DNA of 63,980 nt, filler included, from Octopus bimaculoides (taxonomy: Eukaryota): NCBI RefSeq assembly GCF_001194135.2. It is 7 parts of 7 records of this genome, joined end to end, with 100 filler letters (N's around TTAATTAATTAA, not from the genome) between each part and the next. Parts side by side here need not be neighbours in the genome. Positions count along the whole stretch, not along the records: positions 1 to 19,046 come from NC_068986.1; 6 more parts are not named here. One strand, 5' to 3'. The position numbers were made by a program, and so were the translations under genes. Below the pieces are notes generated by a model, which saw only the letters and a program-made list of their open reading frames with translations, ran no database searches and was not told where the DNA came from. Positions 1 through 19,046 of the stretch are shown piece after piece (within the stretch, counting starts at the first letter, position 1; each line of letters starts with the position of its first letter).

Positions 1-721
1 TATATATACAATGAAGATAATGGGATATATTGCCCTGGTAGGTACCAAATTTTCTCTGAAATCTGTTTCAGATGCTGGCTAACCAAGACACTCCTGATGT
101 AGTACTCGTGCTAATGAGTTGTTAGGTACTAGTAACTTCTCTCGTTGGGTAATTTTGTGCGTGTACTTCAGGACTGTATATATTCCGAAGAGTACTTAAT
201 AATATTTTTCACATCCAGAAACTTTATTTATCAATTACATAGAGCCTATTCTCCGGATCTACACAGATTTCAACTGCAGAGACTGCTGATGAAGCACGTG
301 CTTTTTAAAAGATATACATTTAAACAATTTAAATAAGCACATCCTACTGTGTATAATTATAATTATAGTAATATATGAGAAACGAAGGCCCCGACACTCC
401 AAAATAAACCAAACATATTAGAATACCTTTACATTCATAATGTACCCTGTGCAATAAGTGGAACAATAGTCTATTAGAAACTGTCTAACTTTGTTAAGGA
501 ATACGTAAATAGAATATTGAACCGGGAATACTAACTACAAATTTATAAAAGTGGAATATCGCGATATTGTGTAATGTACTTTAAAACACTTATATACAAA
601 AACAGATATTGTTATATATTTGCATGCGCATATAAATGAATATATGTATGTCTATATAAACGGAATGCAGATTGATGATACATAAATTATTATTATTACG
701 ACAATTATAAATATATAGGAT

Positions 722-730
722 GATACTTAC
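722..730 (-). promoter_or_regulatory. Putative 5' splice donor in the 3' UTR of GPCR copy 1
   Basis: ACA|GTAAGTA with GT at 730-729, 32 nt after the ancestral stop. The same position is conserved in all five paralogues. Confidence 0.7.
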
Positions 731-762
731 TGTATTGATAAAGTATTGAAACAGCGAAAGCC

Positions 763-1689
763 TTAGTGCGTTATAACCTGGAGCGAATAAACCGTACGTC
801 TGTTTACTGAAGACTCTTTACAAAATATTTGTTTCAGGTTGTCGCGAAAGGATTTGCTTACCCCAACATACAACATGAAGTTGAAAACGTTATTGATACA
901 AGATAACATATTTAAAAAATTGTAGATGACCATATCTTTTTTATTGAGGAAGAATATTATCAGGTAATTAATAGATGAAGGAAATGTGGTTAGGAGAAAG
1001 AGTTAGTTTATTGCAATCACTGCATAAATAGTACTTTTGAACTGTTCTGAAATGTTCCGTTGCAAATGCCGACCGAGGTCTGGTCGATAAAGTATTTTAC
1101 GTAATAAAAGGAAAGAACTTATCATCAAAATCATGCCTGGTGCGAATGAATAAATGATGTGTACAGCAAATAAAATATACGTCTCATTATTTAAAAATTC
1201 TGCTAGCATTGTATACGTAACAGCAACACATACAAGAAGCAGGAGCAGTACAAGAGAAGGTTTATTACGTTGAGAAGAATGAAGTCGTGAAAATGGGCAA
1301 AATATTGCCAGCAGACGTTCTAGAGATATGATAACGGTTATCCAGGAAGAATATATAAATATAGAAGAACTGAAAGCCTCGTATATTTCATTGCTAAAAA
1401 TACCTGAATGTACTGTCTTCGGTTGAGAAGTATTTGAAAACCATATTAGTTTTGGTAGATATAGAGAAATAGCAATGAAATCTACAAGAGCTAAACAATG
1501 AAGATATGGAACAATTTTTGTCTGACGTATTTGTTTCTTGAAAAATATTGCAAAAATTGCTAAATTTCCGACAGATCCAAATATCAGTAAAATTATTGAA
1601 ACATACCGTACAGTTCTAAGTAAATAAATATTTTTATCATTTTCTATCTGACTGCTTTTGGTCAATACTCCCATTTCTGTTTTGTTCAT
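763..1689 (-). pseudogene. Class A orphan/peptide-receptor-like GPCR, copy 1, with one in-frame TAA (1003-1005) in TM6
   Basis: The ORF-track 235 aa protein shows TM1 GSVGN, TM2 YLHCLALVD and TM3 ISLERLLAIFCPF. Manual translation past the TAA continues in frame for 79 codons (LFLLTTFPSSINY...INNVFNFMLYVGVSKSFRDNLKQIFCKESSVNRRTVYSLQVITH*), ending at TAA 763-765 and colinear with copies 3-5. First ATG is at 1689; the track start at 1710 is GTG. Confidence 0.9.
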
Positions 1690-2070
1690 ATTTTCTTGTA
1701 TTTCTTCCACTGGTCAGCCATTCTTGACGACAAAAATAACGAAATGAATCCAATTTCTATTATAAATTTTAAAAGACCCCATACGGCTTCATGCGTTGCT
1801 GTTTAATAACAGTATGTCACATTTAATTCTAATTCGTGTCGAGCGTTATCAGATAAATAAGTCGATAAATTATATCGGTAAATAGATAGATAGATAGGCA
1901 TGTGTATATTTATACGCGTGTGAATACATGTCTAGAGACATCGTTATAATAAAGCCTAGCTTTTTATTGGTTGAGTTCTACTGCTTTTGTAACTAGTACT
2001 ATACTTTAGATGACTGTGACCTTCACATTGGTGATAATGTAGACATCGAAGATAATGACAATGAGGATCT

Positions 2071-2103
<33 letters not shown>

Positions 2104-2289
2104 CGATGGTGATGGTGATGTCTATTGGAAGTAAAAATCACTACTATGATGACGATGAAATTGTAAAGATGATTATGCTGTTTGGTTGATGTTGATGATA
2201 TAAAGTTTTTAACAGCATGTACAACGATATGTCAAAGGAAGTATGAATTAATCAATTATTGCTTTCGTTTGCAAAGAGATTACAATACT

Positions 2290-2322
2290 TCCTGCCAATG
2301 GTTTGAACACTGTTAAGTAACT
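2290..2322. promoter_or_regulatory. Conserved 33-bp upstream element of the GPCR cassette (copy 1)
   Basis: TCCTGCCAATGGTTTGAACACTGTTAAGTAACT aligns without gaps to 13840-13872 and 18596-18628. Confidence 0.55.
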
Positions 2323-5054
2323 GCAACTGCAGTTGTTCGGGTGTGGTCTTACTTTAAGCTTCTGCAAGTTTTAACAAAATATATTATTTGTTTAATGTAT
2401 ATGTCACACGGTTATTCAATGAAACCACGTTCAAATATAATTACTGTCTCATACGACTTGTGAAACGACTAATTGCATCGATTACGTGCCCTTCGATATT
2501 ATAACTCATAATTTAACCCCTGGTAGACATGAATGACTCCTAATGTTGCGAGCATGTTTAATTGAGTACTGCTCGATGATGCCCCAGCCTTAGTAGTCCA
2601 AGTGGTTTAAATCAGGAGACATTGGAAGTGGAATGTAGGTTGTGTGAGACCGAGTAGATTCATAATAGAATATGTACGGCGTCACAAAGGGTAACTCTCT
2701 CAATACAGAGCTTGAGAAACGACTCTATTGTCAGGATGTAATCTACATGATTGATGCATTACTGGCGAAACGTGACGTAGCACAACATGGAAGTCATCGC
2801 TAACGTCACGACGATGAGTTCCTTCTATTTCATTTGGAATCGACCGCAATTGTGTAAATCTGAAAGCCGTGGTAAACTGGCCAGACGGTATAGGGCAGGC
2901 ATTTTTAGGCCACATTTTCTAGGTCTCTCCCTTACTGGGGTGAGCAGTGCATTCCTAAAAACGCTACTCAGTCGTCTGGAACGTTGCCGAAATCCTCCTC
3001 TACCCCGACTTCAAAGAATAACGACCAAAGTCCCAAACCGCCTGCATCAGGTTTGTGACTAAGACTTCCGATGGCTACCTCCACCTGTCACTTTCACCAT
3101 TACTCCGTCACTGCAGGGCTTCAGTGGAAAGTTGGGGCTGAAATACGCAGATACCCGTGTGAGAGGTTGATTAAAGTGGATGAGTCGTTGTACTCAGACA
3201 ATCCTACTCTCTCAACAGAATAAACTCTGATCCAGTGGCACGGAGATCCATTACATCGGGAGACCTCCATGCTGCTGTGAATGACAAGGGCGTCTTCGTC
3301 TTTTGTTTTGCTCTAAACGCTACACGACGCCTGCTGGAACCGCTTTTATAACTGTTGGGCCACTTTTAATTTCATCGGCCGAATCTGCCCGAACCAGTCT
3401 TCACATGTCAAGGGTAGGCAAACCCTGAACAACTCACGAGGGTGTTTGGTCAGTCGGCTGTTACATGCAAACAGATACGAGGAGCCATAGGTGAGTGCTG
3501 CGAAGAGTCAAGTGGGGTATCAAGATGGGCAGACTAATCCTAAAAGGCTGCGAAAATCCCCTATCAGAGGTGCTACTCTCACCCAACTCTCTCATACAAA
3601 TTTAAAACACGCTACATGTATGTTATAGATATAAAATAAATAAAAAGAAGTAACATATATCTATCTATATAAAATATATGTAAAACAACGAATATAAAAT
3701 ATACAATATATACATATATATCACACAAACACCCCCCCCCCCCACACACACACACACAGAGGCATGCAGAGGCAGACACGCACGCATGAACACACACATT
3801 GCTGAATGACCGTTGACTACTTATTAGTTCGTCTACCCCTGAAACTGTCAAATATGGGCTCAATATAGTTCCTTGTGGAACATGACTGTTGAATTCTGCA
3901 GGGACAAAATGTTGATATTTTTCAATAGGAAACGTGAAATTCAGTACTGTATCCTGCCACGGATTTCATTTTCCGGCAATGTAAATAGTACGGGATATAA
4001 CACCAGTTATTTAGCTTGCTCCAGAAACTTTAAGTATATTGTTTAGTAGAGGCTCTCTTAGGTAGTTCGAAAACGTATCTGGTTTGGATTATGTGATGTT
4101 TACTCAACCGAGAACGAGTTATTGTTGATACCATGACCCTTTTGTGAGAGGAGAGTGAGAGTTGTGATAGTTAACTACAAGTGATGTTACTCTTTTTGAA
4201 AACTGAAATGATATCGTAATGAGAATTGCTTCGATGTTCAGTCTAACAAAATTCTGCAGTGGCTGTCTATAGGAGAAGCAATTCAGCGACCGTATTCCTT
4301 CAGGAGACTAGAGGAGAATCTAACAGAGATATTTCTATGGGAAAATTCCCTGCTATTCAGATTCACTGCCAAATAATCATAGTTCGCTTCATTTATTGCT
4401 ACAATGATGGCTGAAAGTTATGCCTGGGTTAATATGTTGTGTGTTGAGTTCTCGAATTATTGACGTCTAGATCGGTGAAACCGCTAAAGATAGAGAAATG
4501 TTGTTTCTGCAGGATCCGTTGCATTACATTAGCTCCCTAATGAACAATAATTTCAGTATATATATTTCACTACTTAGAGGAGAAATGAGCTAACAATGGG
4601 TCTATGATTGTGGTCAACCGAATAAGACACTTTGGAATTGTGCGTCCACTTTTAATAACCCAGATCAATTTCCTGGTTTCTGCAGATGTTTTTGCATCTC
4701 ACGATTACTTATTGCTTTAGAGGCTGTCAAGGCCAATATTTTAGTTCAGCGCTGTTTTTATTCAGTTTTCGAGTTTTTTCTTATGATTGCCTATTACTGT
4801 ATTCGATGTCCCTTCATATGATGCTAACAGACAGTTAGCTGTTTTTAGGGTATTTGAAAATAAATTCAGATGACAAAAAATATTAATATAAACATGTGTA
4901 TGAGTGAGTGAGTCGCTCAATATGAATGACGTTTACGTTGCGGAGAAAAACTGAAATGAAAGATAGATTAATAAATAAGTAAATATTAACTATAAAACAA
5001 AACCATATAGGAAGATACTTACTGAAACGATGAAATACTTAAATAGTGAAAGCC

Positions 5055-5966
5055 TTACTTCATTGTAACCTGTAAGGGATACGCTGTACTTCTGTTCACT
5101 GAGGTCTCTTTACAATAAATTTGATTAAATTTGTTACGAAATGATTTGCTTACCTTAACATACACAATGAAGGTGAAAACATTATTGATACAATTTATCA
5201 TATTCTAAAACATGGAGAGGATCTTATTTCGTTGGTTTTTTTTATTGAGATTACGAAGTAATAAATAGAAGCAACAAAGGATAGCAGAAAAAATTGTGTT
5301 TATTGCGATGACGACATAAACACAATATTTTGTCTGTCCTGTAGCATTCAGTTCATAATGCTGATAGAGGTCTGGTCGATAGAGTATTTTATGTACCAGC
5401 AAAATAGAGCTGATTATTACAATCATAGCTTGTATGGATGAAAAATAAAGAATACAGCGCAGAGAATATACAATTCATTCTCCAAAAATACTGTCAGCAT
5501 TGCGTTCATGACAGTAAAAGATAATAGAATCAACAACAGTACAATGTAAGGCTTATAATTTGTGAAGAATGAAGTCTGGAAAATGGGCAAGAAATAGCTA
5601 ATAGACGTTCAATAGATATTGTAACTGTTATTCAGGAGGAATATATATGTATAACGAAAATGTGAAGTTTATATATATTTCACTCTTGAAAATTCTTCTA
5701 AGTGCCGGGTTAAATTGAAAGTCAGTTGACTGCCATATCAAATGTGCGAAAAACAACTAAATAGCAATGAAATCTGCAAGAGCCAAACAATGAAGATATG
5801 GAATAATTTTAGTTTGACGCATTTTCTTCCTACAAAATATTGCGATGAGTGCTAAATTTCCAATTGATCCAGAAGCCAGTGAATAAAATTGTCCTAACAA
5901 AAATACATTTGTATGATTTATTGCCTGGCGGCTATTGGCCATTGCCTCCATTTCTGTATTGTTCAT
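5055..5966 (-). pseudogene. GPCR copy 2, decayed pseudogene
   Basis: Homologous to the other copies, with these lesions: shortened TM1, TAG at 5757-5759 (Trp position), AT-repeat frameshift near 5645, TGA at 5632-5634 (Trp position), a second frameshift near 5430, and TAG at 5205-5207. The C-terminus ...KETSVNRSTAYPLQVTMK* is still recognisable. Confidence 0.9.
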
Positions 5967-6180
5967 ATTTTGTTCCAAAAATCTACAGGCTAGACAATCT
6001 TGAAGCAGGAATAAGTAAGTGTGATTAATTCCTATTATAAAGCATATTTACAATTTCGCTGAAAATTCCATCCCTGGCCGTTTAATATCTGTATATTTCA
6101 TGTAACTCTAATTCATGGTAAACTTGTGCATGCGAATATTATAAACCATAGATGCATTATTGGATAAATAGATGGGATGT

Positions 6181-6187
6181 ACGTATG

Positions 6188-6258
<71 letters not shown>

Positions 6259-6277
6259 ATGTATGCATACGTACATC

Positions 6278-6341
<64 letters not shown>

Positions 6342-6351
6342 ATATCTATCT
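6181..6351. repeat. Representative compound microsatellite (CA/TA/TG/TCTA); dozens of similar tracts flank most gaps
   Basis: Directly visible. These tracts produce the spurious YIYI/THTH/VCVC ORFs in the track. Confidence 0.95.
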
Positions 6352-6814
6352 ANNNNNNNNNNNNNNNNNNNNNNNNNNNNNNNNNNNNNNNNNNNNNNNN
6401 NNNNNNNNNNNNNNNNNNNNNNNNNNNNNNNNNNNNNNNNNNNNNNNNNNNNNNNNNNNNNNNNNNNNNNNNNNNNNNNATATATCAGTATATATATATA
6501 TATATATATATAAATGTATAGAAGTGTAAATACCAACACTGGGCTTAAGCAAAACATAGTTTACGAAGAAGCATTGTCGGCTTCACTTTACATATGTTGA
6601 AGTGTGCAGTCTCCCAAAACATTAGAGATGATGCTTTTCACAATGAAGCAGCTTTCTTTCCCTGTACCTTAGTTTCTGCAATACCGATAACTCTACGTTC
6701 TCATACGTCATCTAATTGTTTACATCCATATGTCTAGGTCATTTTAGTGACAAAGTTAGGATCTCGTTCTAATCTAAGCTGCCTTTCTACATGCTTTTGG
6801 TGTCAACAATTTCA

Positions 6815-6968
6815 GCATTTATCTTATTTACATTTGACCGGTATTTATCATAATCTTGTTTGTTGTTAACACAACGTTTCGGCTGATATACTCTCCAGCC
6901 TTCATCAGGTGCCTTGGGGAAATTTCGAACCTCGGTTCTCCTTCCTAAGGTATGTTTCGATGATATTA

Positions 6969-7038
<70 letters not shown>

Positions 7039-7185
7039 TCAGGTCACTGCTTGGAATCAAACTCAGGATCTTGGGATTAGTAGCCCGCTCTCTTAACGAC
7101 TACGCAATGCACCAATCAAATGTAAATAATGCAAATAATATACATAACGTACATAATTCATCATCTCTTAAATATAGAACTGAAT
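6815..7185 (-). mobile_element. Penelope-like element end (non-autonomous) with (ATT)n tract and partially inverted terminus
   Basis: Contains CCTGATGAAGG...CCGAAACGTTG, the typical Penelope-type terminal motif. TCAAATGTAAATAA occurs inverted at both ends. A related copy lies at 39585-39990. Confidence 0.6.
6868..6913 (-). ncRNA. Minimal type-I hammerhead ribozyme (Penelope-type)
   Basis: RNA GGCAC-CUGAUGA-A-GGCUG-GAGAGUAUAU-CAGCC-GAAA-CGU-U^-GUGUU. It has an intact core, a 5-bp stem I (GGCAC/GUGUU), a 5-bp stem II, and a palindromic ACGU stem III. Confidence 0.7.
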
Positions 7186-8061
7186 TTCAGCATTGTTCAT
7201 CACAAAATGACCGAAAAACATGTTTATAGAGAGGAGTTCATTGCTTCACACTCCTAACGTGCCGATTCTGCCGATAAGAAAAAGAAAAAACAAATAATAA
7301 AATGTGGCTGTAGTTCATTGGTAGTTAAGTATGAAATATATCTATCTATCTCTCTTTCTCAATATATAAATATATATATAATAAGGTATAATGGATACAT
7401 ATGTATATATATATATATATATATNNNNNNNNNNNNNNNNNNNNNNNNNNNNNNNNNNNNNNNNNNNNNNNNNNNNNNNNNNNNNNNNNNNNNNNNNNNN
7501 NNNNNNNNNNNNNNNNNNNNNNNNNNNNNNNNNNNNNNNNNNNNNNNNNNNNNNNNNNNNNNNNNNNNNNNNNNNNNNNNNNNNNNNNNNNNNNNNNNNN
7601 NNNNNNNNNNNNNNNNNNNNNNNNNNNNNNNNNNNNNNNNNNNNNNNNNNNNNNNNNNNNNNNNNNNNNNNNNNNNNNNNNNNNNNNNNNNNNNNNNNNN
7701 NNNNNNNNNNNNNNNNNNNNNNNNNNNNNNNNNNNNNNNNNNNNNNNNNNNNNNNNNNNNNNNNNNNNNNNNNNNNNNNNNNNNNNNNNNNNNNNNNNNN
7801 NNNNNNNNNNNNNNNNNNNNNNNNNNNNNNNNNNNNNNNNNNNNNNNNNNNNNNNNNNNNNNNNNNNNNNNNNNNNNNNNNNNNNNNNNNNNNNNNNNNN
7901 NNNNNNNNNNNNNNNNNNNNNNNNNNNNNNNNNNNNNNNNNNNNNNNNNNNNNNNNNNNNNNNNNNNNNNNNNNNNNNNNNNNNNNNNNNNNNNNNNNNN
8001 NNNNNNNNNNNNNNNNNNNNNNNNNNNNNNNNNNNNNNNNNNNNNNNNNNNNNNNNNNNNN

Positions 8062-8115
<54 letters not shown>

Positions 8116-9091
8116 GTTCATATACATACATATGTACACACACACATATATATATACATACATGCACACATATATACACACATACACATACATATACATA
8201 GACACATATATGCATATTCATACATTTGTACGCATATATACGCGATGGTCGTGTGGTGATGAATATTAAGGCAGTGCTATATGCATAGGAAAATGATGCT
8301 TATATTAACTAGTAAGATATTAAGTGAATGACAATGTATAAAGATGATGGATGGTCTATTAATCTAAAGAGAAAGATTGTGTTGTTAAGTTAGATGGAAA
8401 TTAGAGGGGACCAAAAAAGGTGGTTAAACGAGTAAAAGTTACTTGTATAAACTAAGTTATTATTATTACCAAAGTTTATATCGATAATCACGCTCTATAT
8501 TTGTCGGTGCAGGGGTTTTCCAATAGATAAAATAAAATAAAATTGTTTGTGGTGCAGTATTTTATAAGTAATAAAGCAGGGAGAAGAAAATATTTATATG
8601 TTTTGAATTCATCTTACGATAAAAGTAAACAAATGAACTAAGATTGCTTTCATAATCTTAGATATGTCTAAGAAAGTTAAAGAAGACAATTAAAATTTCC
8701 AGACGCAGAAGAGTGGGACTAATATAAACTAAACAGGATAAATAACTCCTATCTTTGCTAAAGAAAGTGAAAGCAGCAAGTGAAGGAGATGGAGGTACGA
8801 AAGGGCAACGAAATCAAAGGATTAAGGTTATTGGAGCACAACGTATTGAACATAGTTGGAAGTAATGTTTATGTTCAGTTAAACTGAAAGTAATGTTTAA
8901 GTTCATGTTTATAGACGTGCTGGTTGTCCTAATTTGGGTTCAAAAGATGGAGAGTGTTCAGATAACATATATCAAGTGAAACAAGGAACAAAAAAAAACA
9001 TATTACTTAATATATGTTTAAATAATGAATATAGAAACAATTATATAGGTTAATTCTTACAGAATGGTGATGAACTCCAATAGCGACAACC

Positions 9092-10027
9092 TTAGTAAGT
9101 TGTGTACTGCAACGAATATACTGCGTTTCTGTTCATAGAAGTCTCCTTACAACATATTCCTTTCAAGTTCTGGCGAAATGATTTGCTTACTGCCGCGTAT
9201 AAAACAATGTTGATAGCGTTATTAACACACGCTAGCATATCCAAGAATGTATATAATACGCAATCACTTTGTGACTGAAAAACCATTAGAAAGTAATATA
9301 TAGATATAGGAAAAGTTGTAAACAAAAACACACTATTAATTGTTATCACCAGGTAAACAGAATTTTTTGACAGTGATGTAGATCTTCGTTGAACATTCTG
9401 GCCAAGATTCGAAGGCTGGAGTATTTTATGAATCATGAGAATAGACATGAAGAATAATACTATAGCAGGTAGAAACGAATATAATACGATTGCAACACAC
9501 ATTTTGTAATCATGATTGTTTATAAGCATCGTAGACATTGCATAAGTTACAGCAACGCAGAAAAAAAGAGCAAACAATACGATGTAAGGTTTATATCGTC
9601 CAGAAGAGTAAATTTTGGAAAAGGGATACAAAATTGCTCCCAGCCGTTCAATTGATATGAGTACCGTAATCCAGGAGGAATATGCATTGAAGAATAATGA
9701 GATGGTCTCATAAGTTCGACTGGAAAAAATATTGGTGTCTGAAGCCAATAATTGTAGAGAATAAGATAACTGTATGATTCTCGGACAGTTCAAACAAATC
9801 GAAATCATATCTACAGAAACTAGACATAGGAGATATGGAATGACTTTATTCTTACGCATATTCTTCCTGCAAAATGTTGCAATGGCTGCTATATTCCCGA
9901 TAGTTCCAAAAGTAAATATCATTATACAACCATATCTTATGGACGTGATGAAATAAATATTTGCATCATGATTAACTTTCAGGCTATTGTTTGTCATTGT
10001 ATCCTTTTTAGTTATGTTATTTTCCAT
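9092..10027 (-). CDS. Class A GPCR copy 3, intact, 311 aa (FMRFamide-receptor/chemoreceptor-like orphan)
   Basis: Uninterrupted ORF with 7 hydrophobic segments and the motifs GTIGN, YLLCLVSVD, ISIERLGAILYPF and NNAINIVLY. N-terminal N-x-S/T sequons are present. Confidence 0.9.
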   Translation of the reverse strand: MENNITKKDTMTNNSLKVNHDANIYFITSIRYGCIMIFTFGTIGNIAAIATFCRKNMRKNKVIPYLLCLVSVDMISICLNCPRIIQLSYSLQLLASDTNIFSSRTYETISLFFNAYSSWITVLISIERLGAILYPFSKIYSSGRYKPYIVLFALFFCVAVTYAMSTMLINNHDYKMCVAIVLYSFLPAIVLFFMSILMIHKILQPSNLGQNVQRRSTSLSKNSVYLVITINSVFLFTTFPISIYYFLMVFQSQSDCVLYTFLDMLACVNNAINIVLYAAVSKSFRQNLKGICCKETSMNRNAVYSLQYTTY

Positions 10028-10207
10028 TATACAACTCGTAGAGCATTCTTGGCAAAACTGAATAAAATTTTACCTTGTTTTTCAATAATTGTTACTTTCC
10101 AGATTCTATTCTTTATCTCAACAATAATTGCGCAACGTTTTAAACCAAATGAAAATTGAATATATATATATACTCATCACTAGCCATATACATGTGTATA
10201 TATACAT

Positions 10208-10253
<46 letters not shown>

Positions 10254-11577
10254 GGGGGGTGTATGGGGGTGCGTGTGTATGTTCTGTGTGTGTAGATGTC
10301 AGAACAGATTTTTGTGTTAGAAAAATGGTTATTCACGTGAAAATTGTGTTGAAAGTGTTTCTACATCCCTTTTAATCTTATTGTGAAATACACGTTTACC
10401 TTGTTCTTTATTACGATCTTATTTAAGCCTCGTTTTTAGTTCACGTTAATGGTACTTACGAAACGACGCTTTATTGAATGAATACATAGTTTAATTATGT
10501 CTTAACTTCAGTGATTAGTCTCATTTATATAGTACGGAGATGGGTTTGGAAGCGAATAGATTCATTGCTTATACAATAACAGATATTTGAATGCAGATAC
10601 GTATAATGAGAAAGAAGTTGACAGAGAAGGAGTTGGAGAGTGAAAGTTAGAGAACGTGGATGTTTTGCAGAGAGAGAGAGAGAGAGAATGTGACAGAGAG
10701 CAGGACACGTTGAGAGACAGGGAGACGAAGTGAAAGCGTAGGTGAAATAGGAAGAGACACACCTAATGTAAAAAATAGGCGTTTTCTCATTCATTTAACT
10801 TCTAATAAATCTCCTTGAGTCTCATTGGTTCAACTTCTAATTTATCTCCTGATGACAGTGATGATGACGATAAAGAAGAGTGATGTCGGCGATGACAATC
10901 AATAGGAATATAATGACGATTAACGCGATAATGATGATGATGATGAGGAGGCGGAGACGGATCTAGTTGGTTACATTTCTTGGGATTTTCGACATTGTTA
11001 CTCATGACCATTTCAAATACTTAGAAAATACGAGATTCGATTGCCGAATACCATGTTATGGACCACGAAAAGAGATATTTGCGACTTGATTGTTGTACGA
11101 GCGGATATAGGCACAATTCATGCATTGTAGTTCAGTAGCAAATCTGCTGTAGTTTAAGAAGAGTGTTATCCTGTTTCAAATATTTGCAGGATGAGTCACA
11201 TAAGAAAAGATAAAATCACTTCATTAATATTATACAAGAAAAGAGTCGCAGATTTAAAAGAAACAGTAATAACATGTAACACTAATGTGACAGTGAAGAT
11301 ATATCGAGAAAATCCAAGTTACCGCCCTAGGTAGCTGTCTATGATATATTGAATCGGCTTCAACACTGCAACAGAGAGTCACTACTTGTGATATTATTAA
11401 ATTGAGTTACACAATATTTTCTAACGCTGCTTTGGAAAATACAAGCAAATTATTGTATCAAACCACATATCAAATAATCATAAACGGAAAATGTCGACAT
11501 TTAATATATTGCAATATAGTATATAAATGTTTATACACGAAATGTATGTACACACACGCACACACACACACATGCAT

Positions 11578-11653
<76 letters not shown>

Positions 11654-11677
11654 ATATATTTATATATTTATACATAA

Positions 11678-11838
11678 GCGCAGGAATGGCTGTGTGGTAC
11701 ATAGCTTGCTTCCTAACCATATGGTTCCGTGTTCAGTCCCACTGCGTGGCAATTTTGTCGAGTGTCTTCTACTATAACTTCGGGCCGACCAAAACCTAGT
11801 GAGTGGATTTGGTAGAGGAAAGCTCAAAGAAAACCGTC

Positions 11839-11924
<86 letters not shown>

Positions 11925-12143
11925 GTTAGTGCTTGTTGTTTGTGTCTGTTTTTATCACCCCACCATCGCTTCACAATCGATGTTGGTGTGTTTACGTTCC
12001 CATCACCTAGCAGTTCGGCAAAATAGAATGAGAACTAGGCTTGCAAAGAATAAGTTCTGGGATCGATTTATTCGATTAAATGAATTGCTCCAGCATGGCC
12101 GCAGTTAATTGACTGAAACAAATAAAAGAATAAAAGAAAAGAA
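11678..12143 (+). mobile_element. tRNA-derived octopod SINE, near full length, with internal (AT)n
   Basis: Head GCGCAGGAATGGCTGTGTGG...GTTCAGTCCCACTGCG and tail CTCCAGCATGGCCGCAGT...GACTGAAAC. Many further copies occur in the window. Confidence 0.85.
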
Positions 12144-12308
12144 TGTTAAAAATATGAATAAATGTGTATATAAATGACCCATATGATGAGAAGGGAAAAA
12201 ATGAAAGCGAGATATGATTAATAAGTATGTAAACAAAAATATAAGGACAGATATAGAAATATATGTAGATACTTACTGGATCGCTTATGTGCTCAATTAG
12301 CGAAAACC

Positions 12309-13220
12309 TTAGCATGTTGTAACCTGCAACGGATACACTGTACTTCTGTTGATTGAAGTCTCTTTACAAAATATTTGTTTCAAACTGTCGCGAAACGGTT
12401 TGCTTACCGCAGCATACAAAATAAAGTTGAAAACATTATTTATACAAGCTATCATATTGAAAAACATCAATAAAACTGTCTTCCTGCTATTTAGGAGTGA
12501 CACCACTACATAATAAATAGATGTAGGAAACGTTGTTAGTAGAAAAAGTACATTTATTGCAAACACTACATAAGTGCTATTTTTTGTTTGCTCTGAGGCG
12601 TTCCGTTGTACATGCTGGCCGAATTTGGGTCGATGGAGAATTTTGCACACTAGCAAAACAGAGCTGATTATTAAAATTAAAGCTGGTATGAATGAATAAA
12701 TGGAGTATGCGGCACAGATGCTATACATTTTATTCTTTAATACTGTTTTCAGTATTGCGTACGTAACAGCAACACATACAAGGAGCAACAGCAGCACAAT
12801 GTAAGGCTTGTAAGGTTGTGAAGAATGTAGTCTGAAAAATGGGCAAGAAATAGCTAATAAACGTTCAATAGATATAGTGACTGTTATCCAAGAGGAATAT
12901 GTATATAGAGAAAAATTGATGAATCTATAAATTTCACTCCTTAAAACTACAGTGACAGCCGTGTTGGATTGCCAATTAGATGAGAGCCAAATTAGTTTGA
13001 AGAAAAACATCCAAATACCAATGAAATCTACAGCAGCCAAACAATGAAGATATGGAACAATTTTATTCTGACGCATTTTCTTAGTGAAAAATAATGCAAT
13101 AACTGCTAGATTTCCGACAGATCCAAAAATCAATAGAATTATTGAAACGTGACGTATAGTTCTAAGTATGTAGATATTTGTATCATTCACACTCTGGCTA
13201 CTGTTGGTCATTGCATCCAT
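12309..13220 (-). CDS. Class A GPCR copy 4, intact, 303 aa
   Basis: Uninterrupted ORF with GSVGN, YLHCLAAVD, ISIERLLAISCPF and NNVFNFILY. Confidence 0.9.
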   Translation of the reverse strand: MDAMTNSSQSVNDTNIYILRTIRHVSIILLIFGSVGNLAVIALFFTKKMRQNKIVPYLHCLAAVDFIGIWMFFFKLIWLSSNWQSNTAVTVVLRSEIYRFINFSLYTYSSWITVTISIERLLAISCPFFRLHSSQPYKPYIVLLLLLVCVAVTYAILKTVLKNKMYSICAAYSIYSFIPALILIISSVLLVCKILHRPKFGQHVQRNASEQTKNSTYVVFAINVLFLLTTFPTSIYYVVVSLLNSRKTVLLMFFNMIACINNVFNFILYAAVSKPFRDSLKQIFCKETSINRSTVYPLQVTTC

Positions 13221-13839
13221 TTCTATTTCGTTAATTTATTCTTGCTTATTATTCAGTGGGAAAGCAGGAATAGTTAAATATAATCACTTCCAATTACACA
13301 ACAAATATCAAAAGACTGCACAATGTTCCACTTCTTTGACATGTAACACCTTTGTGGTATAACTCTATTTAAGCTCTGTTAAGCCTTTTTTATAAAAATC
13401 TATGTATGTATAATACACAGAGAGTCTATATGCTCACGCATGTATGTATGTATGTATGTATGTATGTATGTATGTGCATAAAGATACGGTTATATGATGA
13501 TCGGTTACGTTTTAGTGTTCATGCATTACTTGATGTTGGTAATGATGGTCATAATGAGGAGGAGGAGGAGAAGAAGGAGGAAGATGATGAGGAGGAGGGG
13601 GAGGATTATGATAAAGAGGGTGATCATAATCATGATGATGATGGCGGTGGTGGTGGTGGGGATTGGGGGAAGGTAGATTAGTCGGACTACTTCTAAGACG
13701 ATAAAATAACAGCAAGGATCGGGCTCGTCGTTTGATGTGGAGGAAGTAACATTATCAACGGTGATAAGACATTAAATGTATAAATGAATCGACATCCCAT
13801 TTGATTACAAAAAAGAAGAAAAGTAAAGGCGTGGATAGA

Positions 13840-13872
13840 TCCTGCCAAAGGCTTGTCTACGGCTAAGTAACT
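13840..13872. promoter_or_regulatory. Conserved 33-bp upstream element (copy 4)
   Basis: TCCTGCCAAAGGCTTGTCTACGGCTAAGTAACT, 620 bp upstream of the ATG. Confidence 0.55.
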
Positions 13873-14222
13873 CTAGAACTTCCGTTGTTATCTTGTATTA
13901 TACTCGTCTAAAGCGAAACAAAAAAAGAAGATGCATTTTAATGTACTATGATTGAAATGATTTAAAATGAATTATTGATTGTATTTAATATGCTAATCGA
14001 TTAAGCTTCTGGGCACGGATCTAAATTCACGATGGAAATTTCGAGGCTAGAATTATAGTCCATATAAATGTGCTGGTGGGTTTCTCAACGAAATAATTTT
14101 CCAAGGAATAATTCTAATTGTGATATGACACACGAGAAAGACATCGGCGTTTGCAGTAATTTACAAATATGTATATCTTAATTTCACTAATATGTGTATG
14201 ATCGTATGGAAGCATATGCGTT

Positions 14223-14265
<43 letters not shown>

Positions 14266-15979
14266 NNNNNNNNNNNNNNNNNNNNNNNNNNNNNNNNNNN
14301 NNNNNNNNNNNNNNNNNNNNAGAAAAGAAGTTATGAAGTGAAATGCTATGATAGTTACTGTCAGTAAGTGAGGAAGTAAGAATTTACGCCCCACTAATAT
14401 TAAGATAAGAATATACTTCTAAAATTAATATTTAGCTTCTAACTTGGTGAGTTGTCAGAAACGTTTGAACGTCGAGCGAAATTCTTAGCGGTCTGAGTTC
14501 AAATTCTACCGAGGCCGGCTTTCCTTTCCGTATATTTTATTTTCCAATTAAGTCTTTAATAAAGTTAGTTTTTATTATGCTGTTGAATTAGAGTAATTTT
14601 AACTTTTATTATTAATTTTCTCTTTCAGCTGTAATTAACTTGCTTTCTGCTTTTTTTAGTTGCTTTCCTTTTCTTTTTAGTTAATTATTTAATCAGGCTA
14701 GTTCATTGATGTGTTATATGTATCATATATGCGCATCTAAATTTATTGGGGCAGGAATATAGTCATTTTTGGCTGTGTCGCTATGGGCAGACTTGAAGTA
14801 AAGTTGTCCAGAAAAGGCACTGGTTAAAAGTGCCTATATTCTAAATTTACATTTAAATTTCGAAATTAATTAAAAGGGATTTTTCATAAATCAAATTTAT
14901 GTTAATGGGTAATATTAACTTGTGTATATCTGATGTGCTTTTATAATTACTGTTCTATTGATAATTATTGATACATCTAGATTAACAGGAGTCAGTGTTG
15001 TTATCACTCACAATCTAGGTTACTTAAGGTGATCCTGGTAACTGATAGATTTGGGATCTTGTTTTTTGCAACTTTTGGTGAGCCATGGTGCAACCAACAC
15101 GATGGTAAAATTCCCTGCTATTAATTTGGAGTGGATGGGTAATATCAAATAATTCAATCACAACATATATTTAAATTACACACGAAAAAAATTGAAATAT
15201 TATCACTTACATGGAAAAATCGTAATATTATCTTTCAGTATTTTATAAGTTATAATCTTAAATAATTAATTGACACATTATTAATTATCTTATAACAGCA
15301 ATGCCTGGAAAAATCATGGATTAAATGGGAAAATGCAAGCATGAAAAGTAATATTCTTCAGATTACATGTTTTAAAATGTTATTACACCTGGAAAAGTAT
15401 AGGGCAAGCTATGACTTCTAGTAAAATAAAGAATAAATAGTTTACTTAAAATATTGCTGCTAAAGTTAAAATTTGAATATCAAAAATTATTTTTTATTAT
15501 ATACAAATAACACTATACTTATTTAAGTAGAATTTGGCTAATTTACTACCTTAAACACAGGAAAAAGTGACTAATTAGACAACTTTACAAATTAGCTGAA
15601 CAGTTTTGTAGAATAAACTTAAAAGAGGATAACTGTAAAGAGTGATACATTACAAGAACTGGCATTCTTTGCGGCAATATTTTAAGTATTATCTTCCCTT
15701 CAACTTCTACTTCCTTTTCTTTCACTTAACAGTTACAGCAGCAAAAGTTGATGACGTGATTTTCACCAAACTAGAATGTATACTTTCCACGTTCATATTT
15801 GAAATTTTAGCATTTCGATAATTTTTCTCAGTCCCGAATTTGATGGACATATAGCGACTCAAGAAATTACTAGTGAGAATTATTTTCATGTATTTGAAGA
15901 GACCTAGAACGGTTAGGAACATTGGTTGTACCCAATAAAGACTATTACACATTGTGTCTCCTATTTTATTAATACCATA

Positions 15980-16038
<59 letters not shown>

Positions 16039-16075
16039 ATAGATAGATAGATAGACAGACAGACAGAAGACAGAC

Positions 16076-16122
<47 letters not shown>

Positions 16123-16196
16123 CAGATAGATAGAAGCATATGAACAAACATCAACATATGTATATGTGTGTGTATGAATATATATATATATTCTTA

Positions 16197-16523
16197 TTTA
16201 CTTCCTCACCACTGGAATAATGATTGATGTTTGCCTCTCAGACCCTATTCCATGGGGCCGAAGAGATGATAGTCCAGTGATGAGAAAGTAAAAACTGTAG
16301 TGAAGACGTGGCTCAAAGAACAGTCAGCAGAATTTACCGGGCAGGAATACATGCTCTCATTTGAAGGTGGAACGTTGCTACTGAGACAAACGGTGACTAT
16401 TTTGAGAAGTAGGGATGTGATCCACAAAGGACCAGATTCCTTTTTATGTATGATACATGTTCCTCTGTTGGTCATTATACCTGTCCTAAACAAAAGGGCA
16501 TTACATTTTGACTCACCCTCATA
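16197..16523 (+). mobile_element. Mariner transposon 3' relic with a small inverted segment
   Basis: The plus strand encodes DEKVKTVVKTWLKEQSAEF...GIHALI..WN...NGDYFEK*, then the TIR (TTTTGACTCACCCTCATA). The minus strand at 16200-16277 encodes DYHLFGPM..GLRGKH. Confidence 0.8.
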
Positions 16524-16830
16524 GATATGCATATATTAATGCAGCTGAAAAAATTGCTGGATTTTTAGGGTATGATTTAAAATAAAGATAAGATTTTCCT
16601 TTTACATATTATTGATTGTTGCAAAATAATCTGATTTTTTAAAATTCCACGAAAGGATTGTTGGATATATCTGTCACACATAAGGATGTACCTGGGATTG
16701 TAATCTACATATATTTAATTGTATTTACTTGCTGCAAATTTCACCGTATTCCTTTTAATCCGAGTGCTTTCTTGATATCTGCCAGGATATTTTAATCCCA
16801 TATTGTTTTCCCTCTCTCTCTCGATCTCTC

Positions 16831-16882
<52 letters not shown>

Positions 16883-17070
16883 ATGGTATGTGTGCGTGTG
16901 ATTTTAAATAGATAAACGTTATGATTATATATGCTATATAAATGATGTATATGTTGAGGAGAGAACGAAAAGAGAGAATGATAATTGTGTAAAATTATAA
17001 ATTTAACGAGAAATATAGATATATATCTAAATTCTTACCTAATCGGTAAATCCATCCATTAATGAAAGCC

Positions 17071-17991
17071 TTAGTTCGTTGTAACCTGCAATGAATACAC
17101 CGTATTTCTGGTCACTGAAGTCCCTTTACCACAAATTTCTTTTAAATTATCGCGAAATGATTTGCTTACCGCGACATACAAAACGAAGTTTAGAGCGTTA
17201 TTCATACAAGCTATTATATCTAAGAAGAAATATACGACCTCATCATGTTGGTTTTGGAATGTCAGTATCAAGTAATTAAGAGATGCGGGAAATGTTGTTA
17301 GTAGGAATATTGAGTTTATAGCGATGACGATATAAATGATATTTTTTGACTGCTCTGAAGAATTGCGTTGAACATGCTGACCGAGCTCAGCTCGATGGAG
17401 TATTTTATACACCAGCAAAAGAGAGCTGATAATTAAAATCATAGCTGGTAGGAATGAATAAATGAAGAGTCCGGCGCAAAAAGTGTACACTCTATTCTTT
17501 AAAAATAACGCCAGCATTGCGTACGTAATAGCAACACATACAAGAAGCAAGAATAGTACAAGATAAGGCTTATAACGTTGTGAAGAATGAAGGGTGGAAA
17601 ACGGGCAAAAAATTGCCCACAGACGTTCAAGAGATATGATAACGGTTATCCAGGAGGAATATATATTTATAGAAAATGTAACTCCTCCATATATTTCACT
17701 GTCGAATATACTTTTATGTGTCGTGTTAGATTGGAATGCGTGTGACTGCCATATGATATTTGCGTAATTCAACCAAATAGCAATAAAATCTACAAGAGCT
17801 AAACATTGAAGATATGGGACAATTTTATTCTGACGCATTTTCTTCCTGAAAAATATTGCAAAAACTGTTAAATTCCCGATAGAACCAAATGTCAATAGAA
17901 TTATTGAAACATATCGCATAGTTCTAAATAAATGAATATCTGCATTGTTTTCTGTATGGGTACTGTTGGGTACTGTATGGGTACTGGTCAT
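17071..17991 (-). CDS. Class A GPCR copy 5, intact, 306 aa from the first ATG
   Basis: The track ORF starts at a TTG (18099); the first in-frame ATG is at 17991. Motifs are GSIGN, YLQCLALVD, ISLERLWAIFCPF and NNALNFVLY. Confidence 0.9.
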   Translation of the reverse strand: MTSTHTVPNSTHTENNADIHLFRTMRYVSIILLTFGSIGNLTVFAIFFRKKMRQNKIVPYLQCLALVDFIAIWLNYANIIWQSHAFQSNTTHKSIFDSEIYGGVTFSINIYSSWITVIISLERLWAIFCPFSTLHSSQRYKPYLVLFLLLVCVAITYAMLALFLKNRVYTFCAGLFIYSFLPAMILIISSLLLVYKILHRAELGQHVQRNSSEQSKNIIYIVIAINSIFLLTTFPASLNYLILTFQNQHDEVVYFFLDIIACMNNALNFVLYVAVSKSFRDNLKEICGKGTSVTRNTVYSLQVTTN

Positions 17992-18595
17992 GGTCTCTGT
18001 ATCTGTTTCGTTCAAATTTTCGTTCAAAGTTTCATCCGCCTGAGAGGCAAATATGACAGCTGGAATAACAAAAGGTATCAAATGCCTATTATACGCCAAA
18101 ATGTAATAAGTCTTTCTGCAGCTTGTATCTACACCTTATGTGTGTGAAATGTTCTCATATAATTCTGTCTGTATATAATATAGGTAAATAAACTAGCTTG
18201 TATGTATGTATATATGTACGTATATATATGGATACAGTTATAACGAGGCTAGTTTTCCTTTTTCACTAGTTTCTACTGCTGCTGTATATAGTAATATATT
18301 ACCGCGACGTTGTTAAGGGTGACAACAACGACAGTGAAGATGATGATGATGATGACAATTCAGATAATGACAACGCAGATGATGAGGTTGATGAGTGTGA
18401 CTACGATCGTGGTATTGTTGGCTACGTGAATTGGGAGTGATGTGTGAATAACTGTTACTAAGACGGGTAATCCATAGAGATGACAATTCCAGCTGGTTAA
18501 TGTAGATAACATTTTTAACAATATCTCTACTAGTATGAAAGGAAAGGTATAAAATGAATCAATATCACTTTTGATTACAAAAAGGAGAGAAAACT

Positions 18596-18628
18596 TCCTG
18601 CCGAAGACTTGACTACTCTTAAGTAACT
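18596..18628. promoter_or_regulatory. Conserved 33-bp upstream element (copy 5)
   Basis: TCCTGCCGAAGACTTGACTACTCTTAAGTAACT, about 605 bp upstream of the ATG. Confidence 0.55.
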
Positions 18629-19007
18629 CTAGCAGTTCCGCTGTATTCTTAATTTAAGCTTGCACGAGATTTACGTTGCAAGTATAATGTAAGTCCTTTG
18701 TGTTAATTGTATATTGAATATATTAATGGATTTAACTTTCCCCAGAGGAACTAAATCCATGAAGGAAATTTCAATTTTAACATTATAGTGCACATAATAT
18801 GGGTATAGACGGTTTTCTCCATGAAATGGTTTCCCAAATAGAAGTTTCGAATACTACTAACATTTCATATGCTACATAACAAGAACAAAGCCATTGGCGT
18901 TTCGTGAGAGGCAATAACATAGAATGCGTCCTTTATCACTTTCTCACTTTCTGTCCGTCTGCCTCTCCAGCCATGTCTCAATTAAACTATCAGTCACCAT
19001 ACATATA

Positions 19008-19046
<39 letters not shown>

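What the first reader, a model, noticed from the sequence alone, without database searches (positions are those of the whole stretch)
722..17070. A splice donor sits 31-32 nt after the stop codon in all five GPCR paralogues
On the coding strand, GTAAG(T/A)A begins exactly 32, 32, 31, 32 and 32 nt after the stop of copies 1-5 (GT at 730, 5022, 9060, 12276, 17038), although the intervening UTR sequence has diverged. Candidate local acceptors exist at 652, 4951, 8884, 12113 and 16934, giving introns of about 70-180 nt. Junctions less than 50-55 nt after a stop escape EJC-dependent NMD (established rule), whereas any premature stop becomes an NMD target. This could be built-in quality control that silences nonsense alleles in a fast-turnover receptor family. 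Alternatively, the donors could splice to a shared downstream exon, protocadherin/UGT1A-style. Both are inference. ORF-based annotation calls such genes intronless and would miss this.
Basis: partly seen in the sequence, partly recalled or inferred. Interest (0 to 1): 0.75.

Follow-up and report, generated by a model that had tools for sequence, protein, structure and literature searches.

The report
Conserved splice-donor motif after GPCR stop codons
Five tandem octopus-type receptor genes, and three distant relatives from another sample, all keep a near-perfect splice-donor sequence 31-35 bases after their stop codon, so these "intronless" genes probably carry a small, previously unannotated intron in their 3' untranslated region, though no RNA evidence was available to prove it.

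Summary
On the minus (coding) strand, GTAAGNAT starts 32, 32, 31, 32 and 32 nt after the stop of the five class-A GPCR paralogues. These five are the only GTAAGNAT sites in 13.5 kb of non-coding coding-strand sequence. Three relatives from Logan contigs (40-58% aa identity) carry the motif 32-35 nt after their stops, including one whose spacer has diverged to near-random identity. Across the eight sequences, 7 of 8 motif columns are invariant, against 1 of 35 spacer columns and 2 of 28 four-fold sites. The conserved positions (+1 to +5, +7, +8) match pairing to the U1 snRNA 5' end.

Downstream sequence looks intron-like: U-rich, G-poor and AG-depleted, with a polypyrimidine tract about 55-65 nt after the GT and a first AG at 68-164 nt. 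The acceptor position is not conserved. Three more divergent members with different C-terminal tails lack the motif.

The best reading is a stop-proximal 3'UTR intron, a kind already known in vertebrates. An unspliced U1-binding repressor element is the main rival. No transcripts could be retrieved.

The parts
763..1674 (-). Copy 1: GPCR ORF with one in-frame premature TAA at 1003-1005, otherwise full length; normal stop TAA at 763-765.
   Evidence: tblastn of copy 4 against this region gives one frame, 62% identity and a single '*'. The ORF pieces are 763-933 and 1003-1710.
723..730 (-). Copy 1 donor motif GTAAGTAT; the spacer 731-762 is 32 nt.
652..730 (-). Copy 1 candidate 3'UTR intron (79 nt). 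There is no AG between the donor and TTTATATAG|, and this acceptor is shared in register with copy 5.
5055..5951 (-). Copy 2: pseudogene with several frameshifts and stops; ancestral stop TAA at 5055-5057.
5015..5022 (-). Copy 2 donor motif GTAAGTAT; the spacer 5023-5054 is 32 nt.
4951..5022 (-). Copy 2 candidate intron (72 nt): TTAAT branch-like site, polypyrimidine tract, then TTTCAG|. An earlier AG lies at 4990.
9092..10027 (-). Copy 3: intact 311-aa GPCR ORF.
9053..9060 (-). Copy 3 donor motif GTAAGAAT; the spacer 9061-9091 is 31 nt.
8884..9060 (-). Copy 3 candidate intron. The first AG after the polypyrimidine tract (8974-8998) is at 8929 (132 nt).
12309..13220 (-). Copy 4: intact 303-aa GPCR ORF.
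12269..12276 (-). Copy 4 donor motif GTAAGTAT; the spacer 12277-12308 is 32 nt.
12113..12276 (-). Copy 4 candidate intron (164 nt). It has no AG at all after the donor until TTAAC + a pyrimidine tract of about 30 nt + CAG| at 12113.
17071..17991 (-). Copy 5: intact 306-aa GPCR ORF, counted from ATG 17991.
17031..17038 (-). Copy 5 donor motif GTAAGAAT; the spacer 17039-17070 is 32 nt.
16934..17038 (-). Copy 5 candidate intron (105 nt): polypyrimidine tract 16957-16981, then TTTATATAG|.

Best explanation
Proposal. Each gene of this octopus-type class-A (Srw-like) GPCR subfamily carries a functional U1-type 5' splice site 31-35 nt after its stop codon. The site starts a short, stop-proximal intron in the 3'UTR. 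It is most likely removed with a nearby acceptor 70-180 nt downstream.

Gene structure. The gene would have two exons. Exon 1 holds the 5'UTR, the whole ORF and about 32 nt of 3'UTR. Exon 2 holds the rest of the 3'UTR.

Shown. The motif is under purifying selection. Its conserved positions are those that pair with the U1 snRNA 5' end. The downstream sequence has intron-like composition, with a polypyrimidine tract and then a first AG.

Inferred. That it is actually spliced. That its role is to give an otherwise intronless mRNA one splicing event (EJC deposition, export, expression). That it sits in the zone where the terminating ribosome removes the EJC. A junction at +32 would place a canonical EJC (about 24 nt upstream of a junction) about 8 nt after the stop. 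A premature stop such as the one in copy 1, about 270 nt upstream of the junction, would then be exposed to EJC-dependent decay, if that pathway exists in cephalopods.
For: - Position and uniqueness: the only five GTAAGNAT sites in 13.5 kb of non-coding coding-strand sequence are the five post-stop sites.
- Selection: 7 of 8 motif columns are invariant in 8 sequences, against 1 of 35 in the spacer and 2 of 28 at four-fold sites. The motif is present at +32 in L004 although its spacer has diverged to near-random identity.
- Pattern of constraint: +1 to +5, +7 and +8 are fixed, while -1 and +6 are free. GTAAGTAT gives 8 consecutive pairs with the conserved U1 5' end AUACUUAC (established knowledge). 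The sites are among the best U1 matches on the coding strand.
- Intron-like downstream sequence: the first 62 nt have 3-8% G, 42-58% T and 0-1 AG against 3.1 expected. The strongest 25-nt pyrimidine window lies at GT+55 to +64 in c2-c5 (0.84-0.92 pyrimidine). The first AG after the tract falls at 72-164 nt, and copy 4 has TTAAC + a tract of about 30 nt + CAG.
- No canonical poly(A) signal lies before the candidate acceptors.
- No conserved RNA structure and no Rfam family offers another explanation.
- Precedent: conserved stop-proximal 3'UTR introns exist in 167 vertebrate genes (bioRxiv 10.1101/677666).
- An unspliced 5'ss motif in a terminal exon is repressive (PMC3826338, PMC9074902), so conservation in intact receptor genes is easier to explain if it is spliced.
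Against: - There is no RNA evidence. All related contigs obtained (L001-L010) read straight through the site and look genomic, since they end in microsatellites or SINE-like repeats.
- The acceptor is not positionally conserved. Copy 4 has lost the AG shared by c1 and c5, and predicted intron lengths differ (68-177 nt).
- The -1 position is A in 6 of 8 sites rather than the usual G.
- The U-rich, AG-poor composition is shared by descent among the copies, so it is not independent evidence.
- Exon 2 shows no conservation and no conserved poly(A) signal.
- The only annotated product of the window in the protein database (P0003, copy 5) ends at an in-ORF GTAAGC, not at this site.
Confidence: 0.5

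Rival explanations
1. U1-binding element that is not spliced. The conserved 5'ss motif sits in the terminal exon and recruits U1 snRNP. This would inhibit cleavage and polyadenylation or cause nuclear retention and decay, keeping these receptor genes at low default expression or gating them post-transcriptionally.
For: - The conservation pattern is that of U1 pairing, with 8 contiguous pairs in 5 of 8 sites.
- The acceptor is not conserved.
- The first canonical poly(A) signals lie 236-534 nt after the stop.
- U1 sites in terminal exons silence genes (PMC3826338, PMC4474610, PMC9074902).
Against: - A polypyrimidine tract and a first AG follow every site with enough sequence, so the splicing machinery would be expected to use them.
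- A purely repressive element kept in every intact member needs an unknown de-repression mechanism.
Confidence: 0.17
2. Real donor, distal acceptor. The donors splice to a far downstream non-coding exon shared by the cluster, or to the acceptor-like site in front of the next paralogue. The ORF-bearing exons would then behave as variable or cassette exons of a longer transcription unit.
For: - All five units have the same orientation, and each has its own strong donor.
- Local acceptors are not conserved.
- A pyrimidine tract + (C)AAG or CAG lies 20-68 nt upstream of the ATG in c1, c2, c3 and c5 and in L001.
Against: - No conserved candidate exon lies downstream of the units.
- The stop codon precedes the donor, so shared exons could not be coding.
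- A TATAATAG box upstream of the pyrimidine tract in c1, c2 and c5 fits independent promoters equally well.
- Only 720 nt lie beyond copy 1, so a shared exon cannot be searched for here.
Confidence: 0.13
3. Selected function is nonsense-allele surveillance. The intron exists specifically so that premature stops in a fast-turnover family trigger EJC-dependent NMD while the normal stop escapes.
For: - The geometry fits the vertebrate 50-55 nt rule.
- Copy 1 carries a premature stop about 270 nt upstream of the putative junction.
Against: - This presupposes both splicing and EJC-dependent NMD in molluscs, and neither was tested here.
- Stop-proximal 3'UTR introns can themselves elicit NMD in vertebrates (bioRxiv 10.1101/677666).
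- Selection for silencing future pseudogenes is weak. NMD avoidance explains the position without invoking surveillance as the purpose.
Confidence: 0.1
4. Another cis-element (RNA-binding-protein or miRNA site), or simple inheritance from recent duplication without function.
For: - The five window copies are tandem duplicates whose homology runs 80-155 nt past the stop.
- A TATAT block 12-16 nt after the GT is also partly conserved.
Against: - Neutral inheritance is excluded by the contrast with the spacer and four-fold sites, and by L004.
- No known element other than U1 pairing explains fixation of +1 to +5, +7 and +8.
- No conserved structure was found.
Confidence: 0.07

Closest known systems
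[quoted passage not shown]
   Same: A conserved intron would start less than 50 nt after the stop codon. Its position is relevant to EJC deposition about 24 nt upstream of the junction.
   Different: Here it is an invertebrate (octopus-type) lineage-specific tandem receptor family with an otherwise intronless ORF, the feature is shared by paralogues, and splicing is not yet shown. In vertebrates these introns were found to elicit NMD rather than escape it.
Mammalian olfactory-receptor-type gene structure (single coding exon with introns only in UTRs; my own knowledge)
   Same: Tandem chemoreceptor-like GPCR genes whose ORF is one exon, with splicing confined to untranslated parts that ORF-based annotation misses.
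   Different: To my knowledge OR genes have mainly 5'UTR introns. A family-wide donor at a fixed distance after the stop has not been described for them.
U1 snRNP-dependent inhibition of polyadenylation, or nuclear retention, by 5'ss motifs in terminal exons (BPV-1 late 3'UTR, U1A autoregulation, U1i; PMC3826338, PMC9074902, PMC4474610)
   Same: A near-consensus U1 complementary site lies in a 3'UTR a few hundred nt upstream of poly(A) signals.
   Different: Those elements act without a downstream 3' splice site. Here each site is followed by a pyrimidine tract and an AG.
Variable-exon / constant-exon clusters (clustered protocadherins, UGT1A, insect Gr28b/Gr39a; my own knowledge)
   Same: Tandem same-orientation large exons, each followed by its own 5' splice site.
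   Different: In those clusters the variable exon has no stop and splices in frame to coding constant exons. Here a conserved stop and a conserved C-terminal tail precede the donor, and no constant exon was found.

Membership tests
Stop-proximal 3'UTR intron | Consensus 5' splice site less than 50 nt downstream of the stop codon | tested here: met
   GTAAGNAT lies 31-35 nt after the stop in 8 sequences.
Stop-proximal 3'UTR intron | Evolutionary conservation of the splice site beyond the neutral rate | tested here: met
   7 of 8 motif columns are invariant, against 1 of 35 in the spacer and 2 of 28 at four-fold sites.
Stop-proximal 3'UTR intron | Matching branch site, polypyrimidine tract and 3' splice site | tested here: inconclusive
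   A tract and a first AG are present in all six sequences long enough to judge, but the AG position is not conserved between copies.
Stop-proximal 3'UTR intron | Exon-exon junction seen in mature mRNA | not testable with these tools
   No transcripts could be obtained. The window proteins are not on record, and the Logan contigs of relatives are genomic read-throughs.
Variable-exon / constant-exon cluster (protocadherin, UGT1A style) | Tandem same-strand variable exons, each with its own donor | tested here: met
   Five units on the minus strand, each with the donor.
Variable-exon / constant-exon cluster (protocadherin, UGT1A style) | Variable exon is open at its 3' end and splices in frame to coding constant exons | tested here: not met
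   A conserved stop and the conserved tail ...VY[ST][LVI]Q+4-5 aa precede the donor.
Variable-exon / constant-exon cluster (protocadherin, UGT1A style) | Shared downstream exon(s) with an acceptor | not testable with these tools
   Only 720 nt lie downstream of copy 1. No conserved downstream block is present in the window.
U1-dependent poly(A)-inhibitory 3'UTR element | Extended complementarity to the U1 5' end | tested here: met
   GTAAGTAT gives 8 contiguous pairs in 5 of 8 sites. The other three have 7 of 8.
U1-dependent poly(A)-inhibitory 3'UTR element | Lies in the terminal exon with no usable downstream 3' splice site | tested here: inconclusive
   Candidate 3' splice sites exist, but whether they are used is unknown.
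Class-A (rhodopsin-like, Srw-like) GPCR | 7TM domain matches at curated thresholds | tested here: met
   PF10324 7TM_GPCR_Srw scores 41-50 bits (cut-off 22.2). PF00001 scores 30-36 bits. The most distant PDB relatives are GPR139, galanin and neurotensin receptors.

The most novel reading that the evidence does not exclude
The ORF-bearing exons are not independent genes. They would be alternative cassette or variable exons of one long transcription unit. Each is bounded by an acceptor-like pyrimidine tract + AG 20-68 nt before its ATG and by the conserved donor 32 nt after its stop. Which receptor a cell makes would then be decided by alternative splicing onto shared non-coding exons, with mis-included extra ORF exons removed by NMD.
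Probability: 0.06. Interest if true: 0.85.

Novelty: new member of a known kind. Interest (0 to 1): 0.45.

Why it matters
- Annotation: if the donors are used, this octopod receptor subfamily is mis-annotated as intronless, and its mRNAs undergo one splicing event placed just inside the zone where a terminating ribosome clears the EJC.
- NMD evolution: a distance held at 31-35 nt across paralogues that are only 40% identical would be indirect evidence that a position-dependent EJC/NMD rule operates in a lophotrochozoan. It has mostly been shown in vertebrates and plants. The locus offers a ready test, because it contains a natural nonsense allele (copy 1) beside intact copies.
- Regulation: if the site is instead an unspliced U1 site, it would be a family-wide built-in repressor of receptor expression. 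Either outcome gives a concrete regulatory handle on a lineage-specific GPCR expansion.

Tried and rejected
- Retrieving transcripts or the source locus. Copies 3 and 4 and the annotated product P0003 are not on record. The O. bimaculoides UniRef relatives P0004 and P0006 are not on record either. All contigs obtained come from three runs (SRR11869384, SRR11869385 and SRR11869391) and look genomic.
- Conserved RNA structure around the stop and motif: RNAalifold predicts no pairs. Rejected.
- Known RNA family or tRNA/SINE origin: Rfam gave nothing and ARAGORN gave nothing.
- Read-through extension or back-up stop. The TAA inside GTAAG is in frame in 6 of 8 sequences. However, c4 and c5 have earlier in-frame stops 4 codons after the normal stop, the extension peptide is not conserved, and the 32-nt spacing is mostly inherited. 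Rejected.
- Neutral retention after recent duplication: rejected and by L004.
- A conserved 5' exon donor. The block about 600 nt upstream of the ATG in c1, c4 and c5 has no conserved GT site, so a 5'UTR intron could not be established.
- Linking the family to the named expansion groups of Ritschard et al. (PMC6408891). The accessions A0A0L8ICK4 and A0A0L8II40 are not in the held supplements. Neither that paper nor PMC11886862 mentions UTR introns.
- Pfam on ORFs of the GC-richer stretch 2700-3900: no hits.


Full report
**What the window is.** The piece (1-19046) is AT-rich DNA rich in microsatellites. It carries five tandem paralogues of a class-A GPCR on the minus strand.
- Pfam gives 7TM_GPCR_Srw and 7tm_1.
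- The nearest solved structures are only distant peptide or orphan receptors such as GPR139, galanin and neurotensin receptors.
- The only named relatives are Octopus bimaculoides "GPCR family 1" proteins.
- An exhaustive profile search finds just 24 clusters at 50% identity with E <= 1e-30 before scores fall to generic GPCR levels. This is therefore a small, lineage-specific family.
- Copies 3, 4 and 5 are intact (311, 303 and 306 aa). Copy 1 is full length except for one in-frame TAA at 1003-1005. Copy 2 has several frameshifts and stops.
- The three assembly gaps lie inside intergenic (TATC)n or (TA)n repeats, at least 400 nt from any ORF, spacer or candidate intron. They do not touch the finding.

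**The observation.** GTAAG(T/A)AT starts 32, 32, 31, 32 and 32 nt after the stop codons, with the G at 730, 5022, 9060, 12276 and 17038.
- On the coding strand, 13.5 kb of non-coding sequence contains GTAAGNAT exactly five times, and these are the five sites.
- Homology between units runs only 80-155 nt past the stop. Within that flank the motif is the best conserved block.

**Family-wide test.** I retrieved genomic contigs for seven more family members from Logan assemblies of three SRA runs (SRR11869384, SRR11869385 and SRR11869391).
- L001 (58% aa identity to copy 4) has GTAAGTAT 35 nt after its stop. L002 (57%) has it at 33 nt.
- L004 (40%, TGA stop) has GTAAGCAT at exactly 32 nt, and its spacer has diverged to near-random identity with the others.
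- L007, L009 and L010 (about 40%) lack any GTAAG or GTGAG near the stop.
- L008 ends 20 nt after its stop and is uninformative.
- All eight motif carriers share the C-terminal tail ...R..VY[ST][LVI]Q + 4-5 aa + stop. The three non-carriers have other tails.
- A neighbour-joining tree, with weak support, places L009 and L010 outside and pairs L004 with L007. This suggests one old gain, with loss in L007 when its stop moved.

**Selection.**
- In the 8-sequence alignment, 7 of 8 motif columns are invariant. The comparison figures are 1 of 35 for the spacer, 4 of 23 for the following columns and 7 of 28 for the last ORF columns.
- Four-fold degenerate sites are invariant in only 2 of 28 columns across the six intact ORFs, and pairwise four-fold identity is 0.31-0.67.
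- By my rough arithmetic, seven specified neutral positions staying identical has a probability of about 1e-8. It stays below about 1e-6 after allowing for the choice of position.
- For L004 alone, the chance of GTAAG falling within +31 to +35 is about 0.004.

**What the motif is.**
- The fixed positions are +1 to +5, +7 and +8, while -1 and +6 vary. This is the footprint of pairing to the 5' end of U1 snRNA (AUACUUAC; established knowledge).
- GTAAGTAT gives eight contiguous pairs, which can compensate for the non-G at -1.
- The sites are among the best U1 matches on the coding strand.
- No consensus RNA structure and no Rfam family competes.

**Is there an intron?**
- The 62 nt after each donor contain 3-8% G and 42-58% T. 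They hold 0-1 AG against 3.1 expected.
- The strongest 25-nt pyrimidine window falls at GT+55 to +64 in copies 2-5, at 0.84-0.92 pyrimidine.
L002 gives 68 nt.
- Copy 4 has no AG at all for 158 nt and then TTAAC + a pyrimidine tract of about 30 nt + CAG.
- No canonical poly(A) signal precedes these acceptors. The first ones lie 236-534 nt after the stop.
- The weakness is that the acceptor is not conserved in register. Only c1 and c5 share TTTATATAG, only c2 and L002 share TTCAG, and the compositional features are partly inherited.
- No spliced RNA could be obtained, so splicing remains inferred.

**Mechanism.**
- I rate a real stop-proximal 3'UTR intron as the most likely reading (about 0.5).
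- A junction at +32 would put the EJC, about 24 nt upstream, roughly 8 nt after the stop, within reach of the terminating ribosome. This is the classical NMD-safe position.
- Such introns are a known class in vertebrates. There they were found to be able to elicit NMD (bioRxiv 10.1101/677666), so escape is not assured.
It remains untested.
- The main rival is an unspliced U1-binding site that represses polyadenylation or export (PMC3826338, PMC9074902, PMC4474610).
- Splicing to a distal or shared exon cannot be excluded, but nothing in the window supports it. It also fails the defining in-frame feature of protocadherin/UGT1A-type clusters, because the stop precedes the donor.

**Verdict.** This is a real, selected, positionally constrained donor-type element, and probably an unannotated 3'UTR intron. 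It is a new example of a known kind and of moderate interest. RNA evidence will decide it.

Noticed in passing
window 1003-1005 (copy 1) and 5055-5951 (copy 2): Copy 1 is intact apart from a single in-frame TAA where paralogues mostly have Ser (Val in copy 4; ...AIN*LFLLTTFP). Copy 2 is a multiply disrupted pseudogene. Both still keep a perfect GTAAGTAT.
   Followed up: yes
window 17167-17171 (GT at 17169); also GT at 861, 5153, 9190, 12407: A second GTAAGC lies inside the ORF at the conserved Val-Ser-Lys just after TM7 (NxxNFxLYxA|VSK). The Val codon is GTA in all 7 sequences that have Val. The only database protein encoded by the window (P0003, 274 aa, copy 5) ends exactly before this site. 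This suggests the source annotation used it as a donor; AG|TGA sites follow at 17115 and 16834. Unresolved.
   Followed up: partly
window 2183-2361, 13774-14104, 18494-18837 (cores at 2290-2323, 13840-13873, 18596-18629), minus strand: A conserved non-coding block lies about 600-620 nt upstream of the ATG of copies 1, 4 and 5 (GAGTTACTTAA..GT...CAAG.CTT.GGCAGGA). It gives 3 matches against 0 expected. It may be a promoter, an enhancer or a 5' exon. No conserved donor follows it.
   Followed up: partly
window 1723-1765, 5999-6040, 10048-10070, 18040-18095 (minus strand), and L001 about 100-125: A pyrimidine tract + (C)AAG or CAG lies 20-68 nt upstream of the ATG, preceded in c1, c2 and c5 by TATAATAG. 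This could be either a TATA box plus initiator core promoter or a branch site plus 3' splice site of a 5'UTR intron.
   Followed up: partly
window 6353-6479, 7425-8061, 14266-14320: All three assembly gaps are flanked by (CTAT)n or (TA)n microsatellites, which is typical of short-read assembly breaks. Intergenic distances are therefore only estimates.
   Followed up: yes
window 2001-4000: This stretch has higher G+C (0.39-0.44 against about 0.32) between copies 2 and 1. It has short ORFs on both strands without Pfam hits, and a (TGA)n run at 2071-2120 that reads as poly-His. It may be a transposon remnant.
   Followed up: partly
window 17952-17986: An 11-nt unit (CTGTATGGGTA, 3.3 copies) lies within the N-terminal coding region of copy 5. 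This gives it a slightly repetitive extracellular N-terminus.
   Followed up: no
L002 1300-1539: Sequence downstream of this relative looks like a tRNA-derived SINE (GGTTTCGATCCCACAGCG...). Its contigs end in repeats, which indicates that the Logan contigs are genomic rather than transcript assemblies.
   Followed up: no
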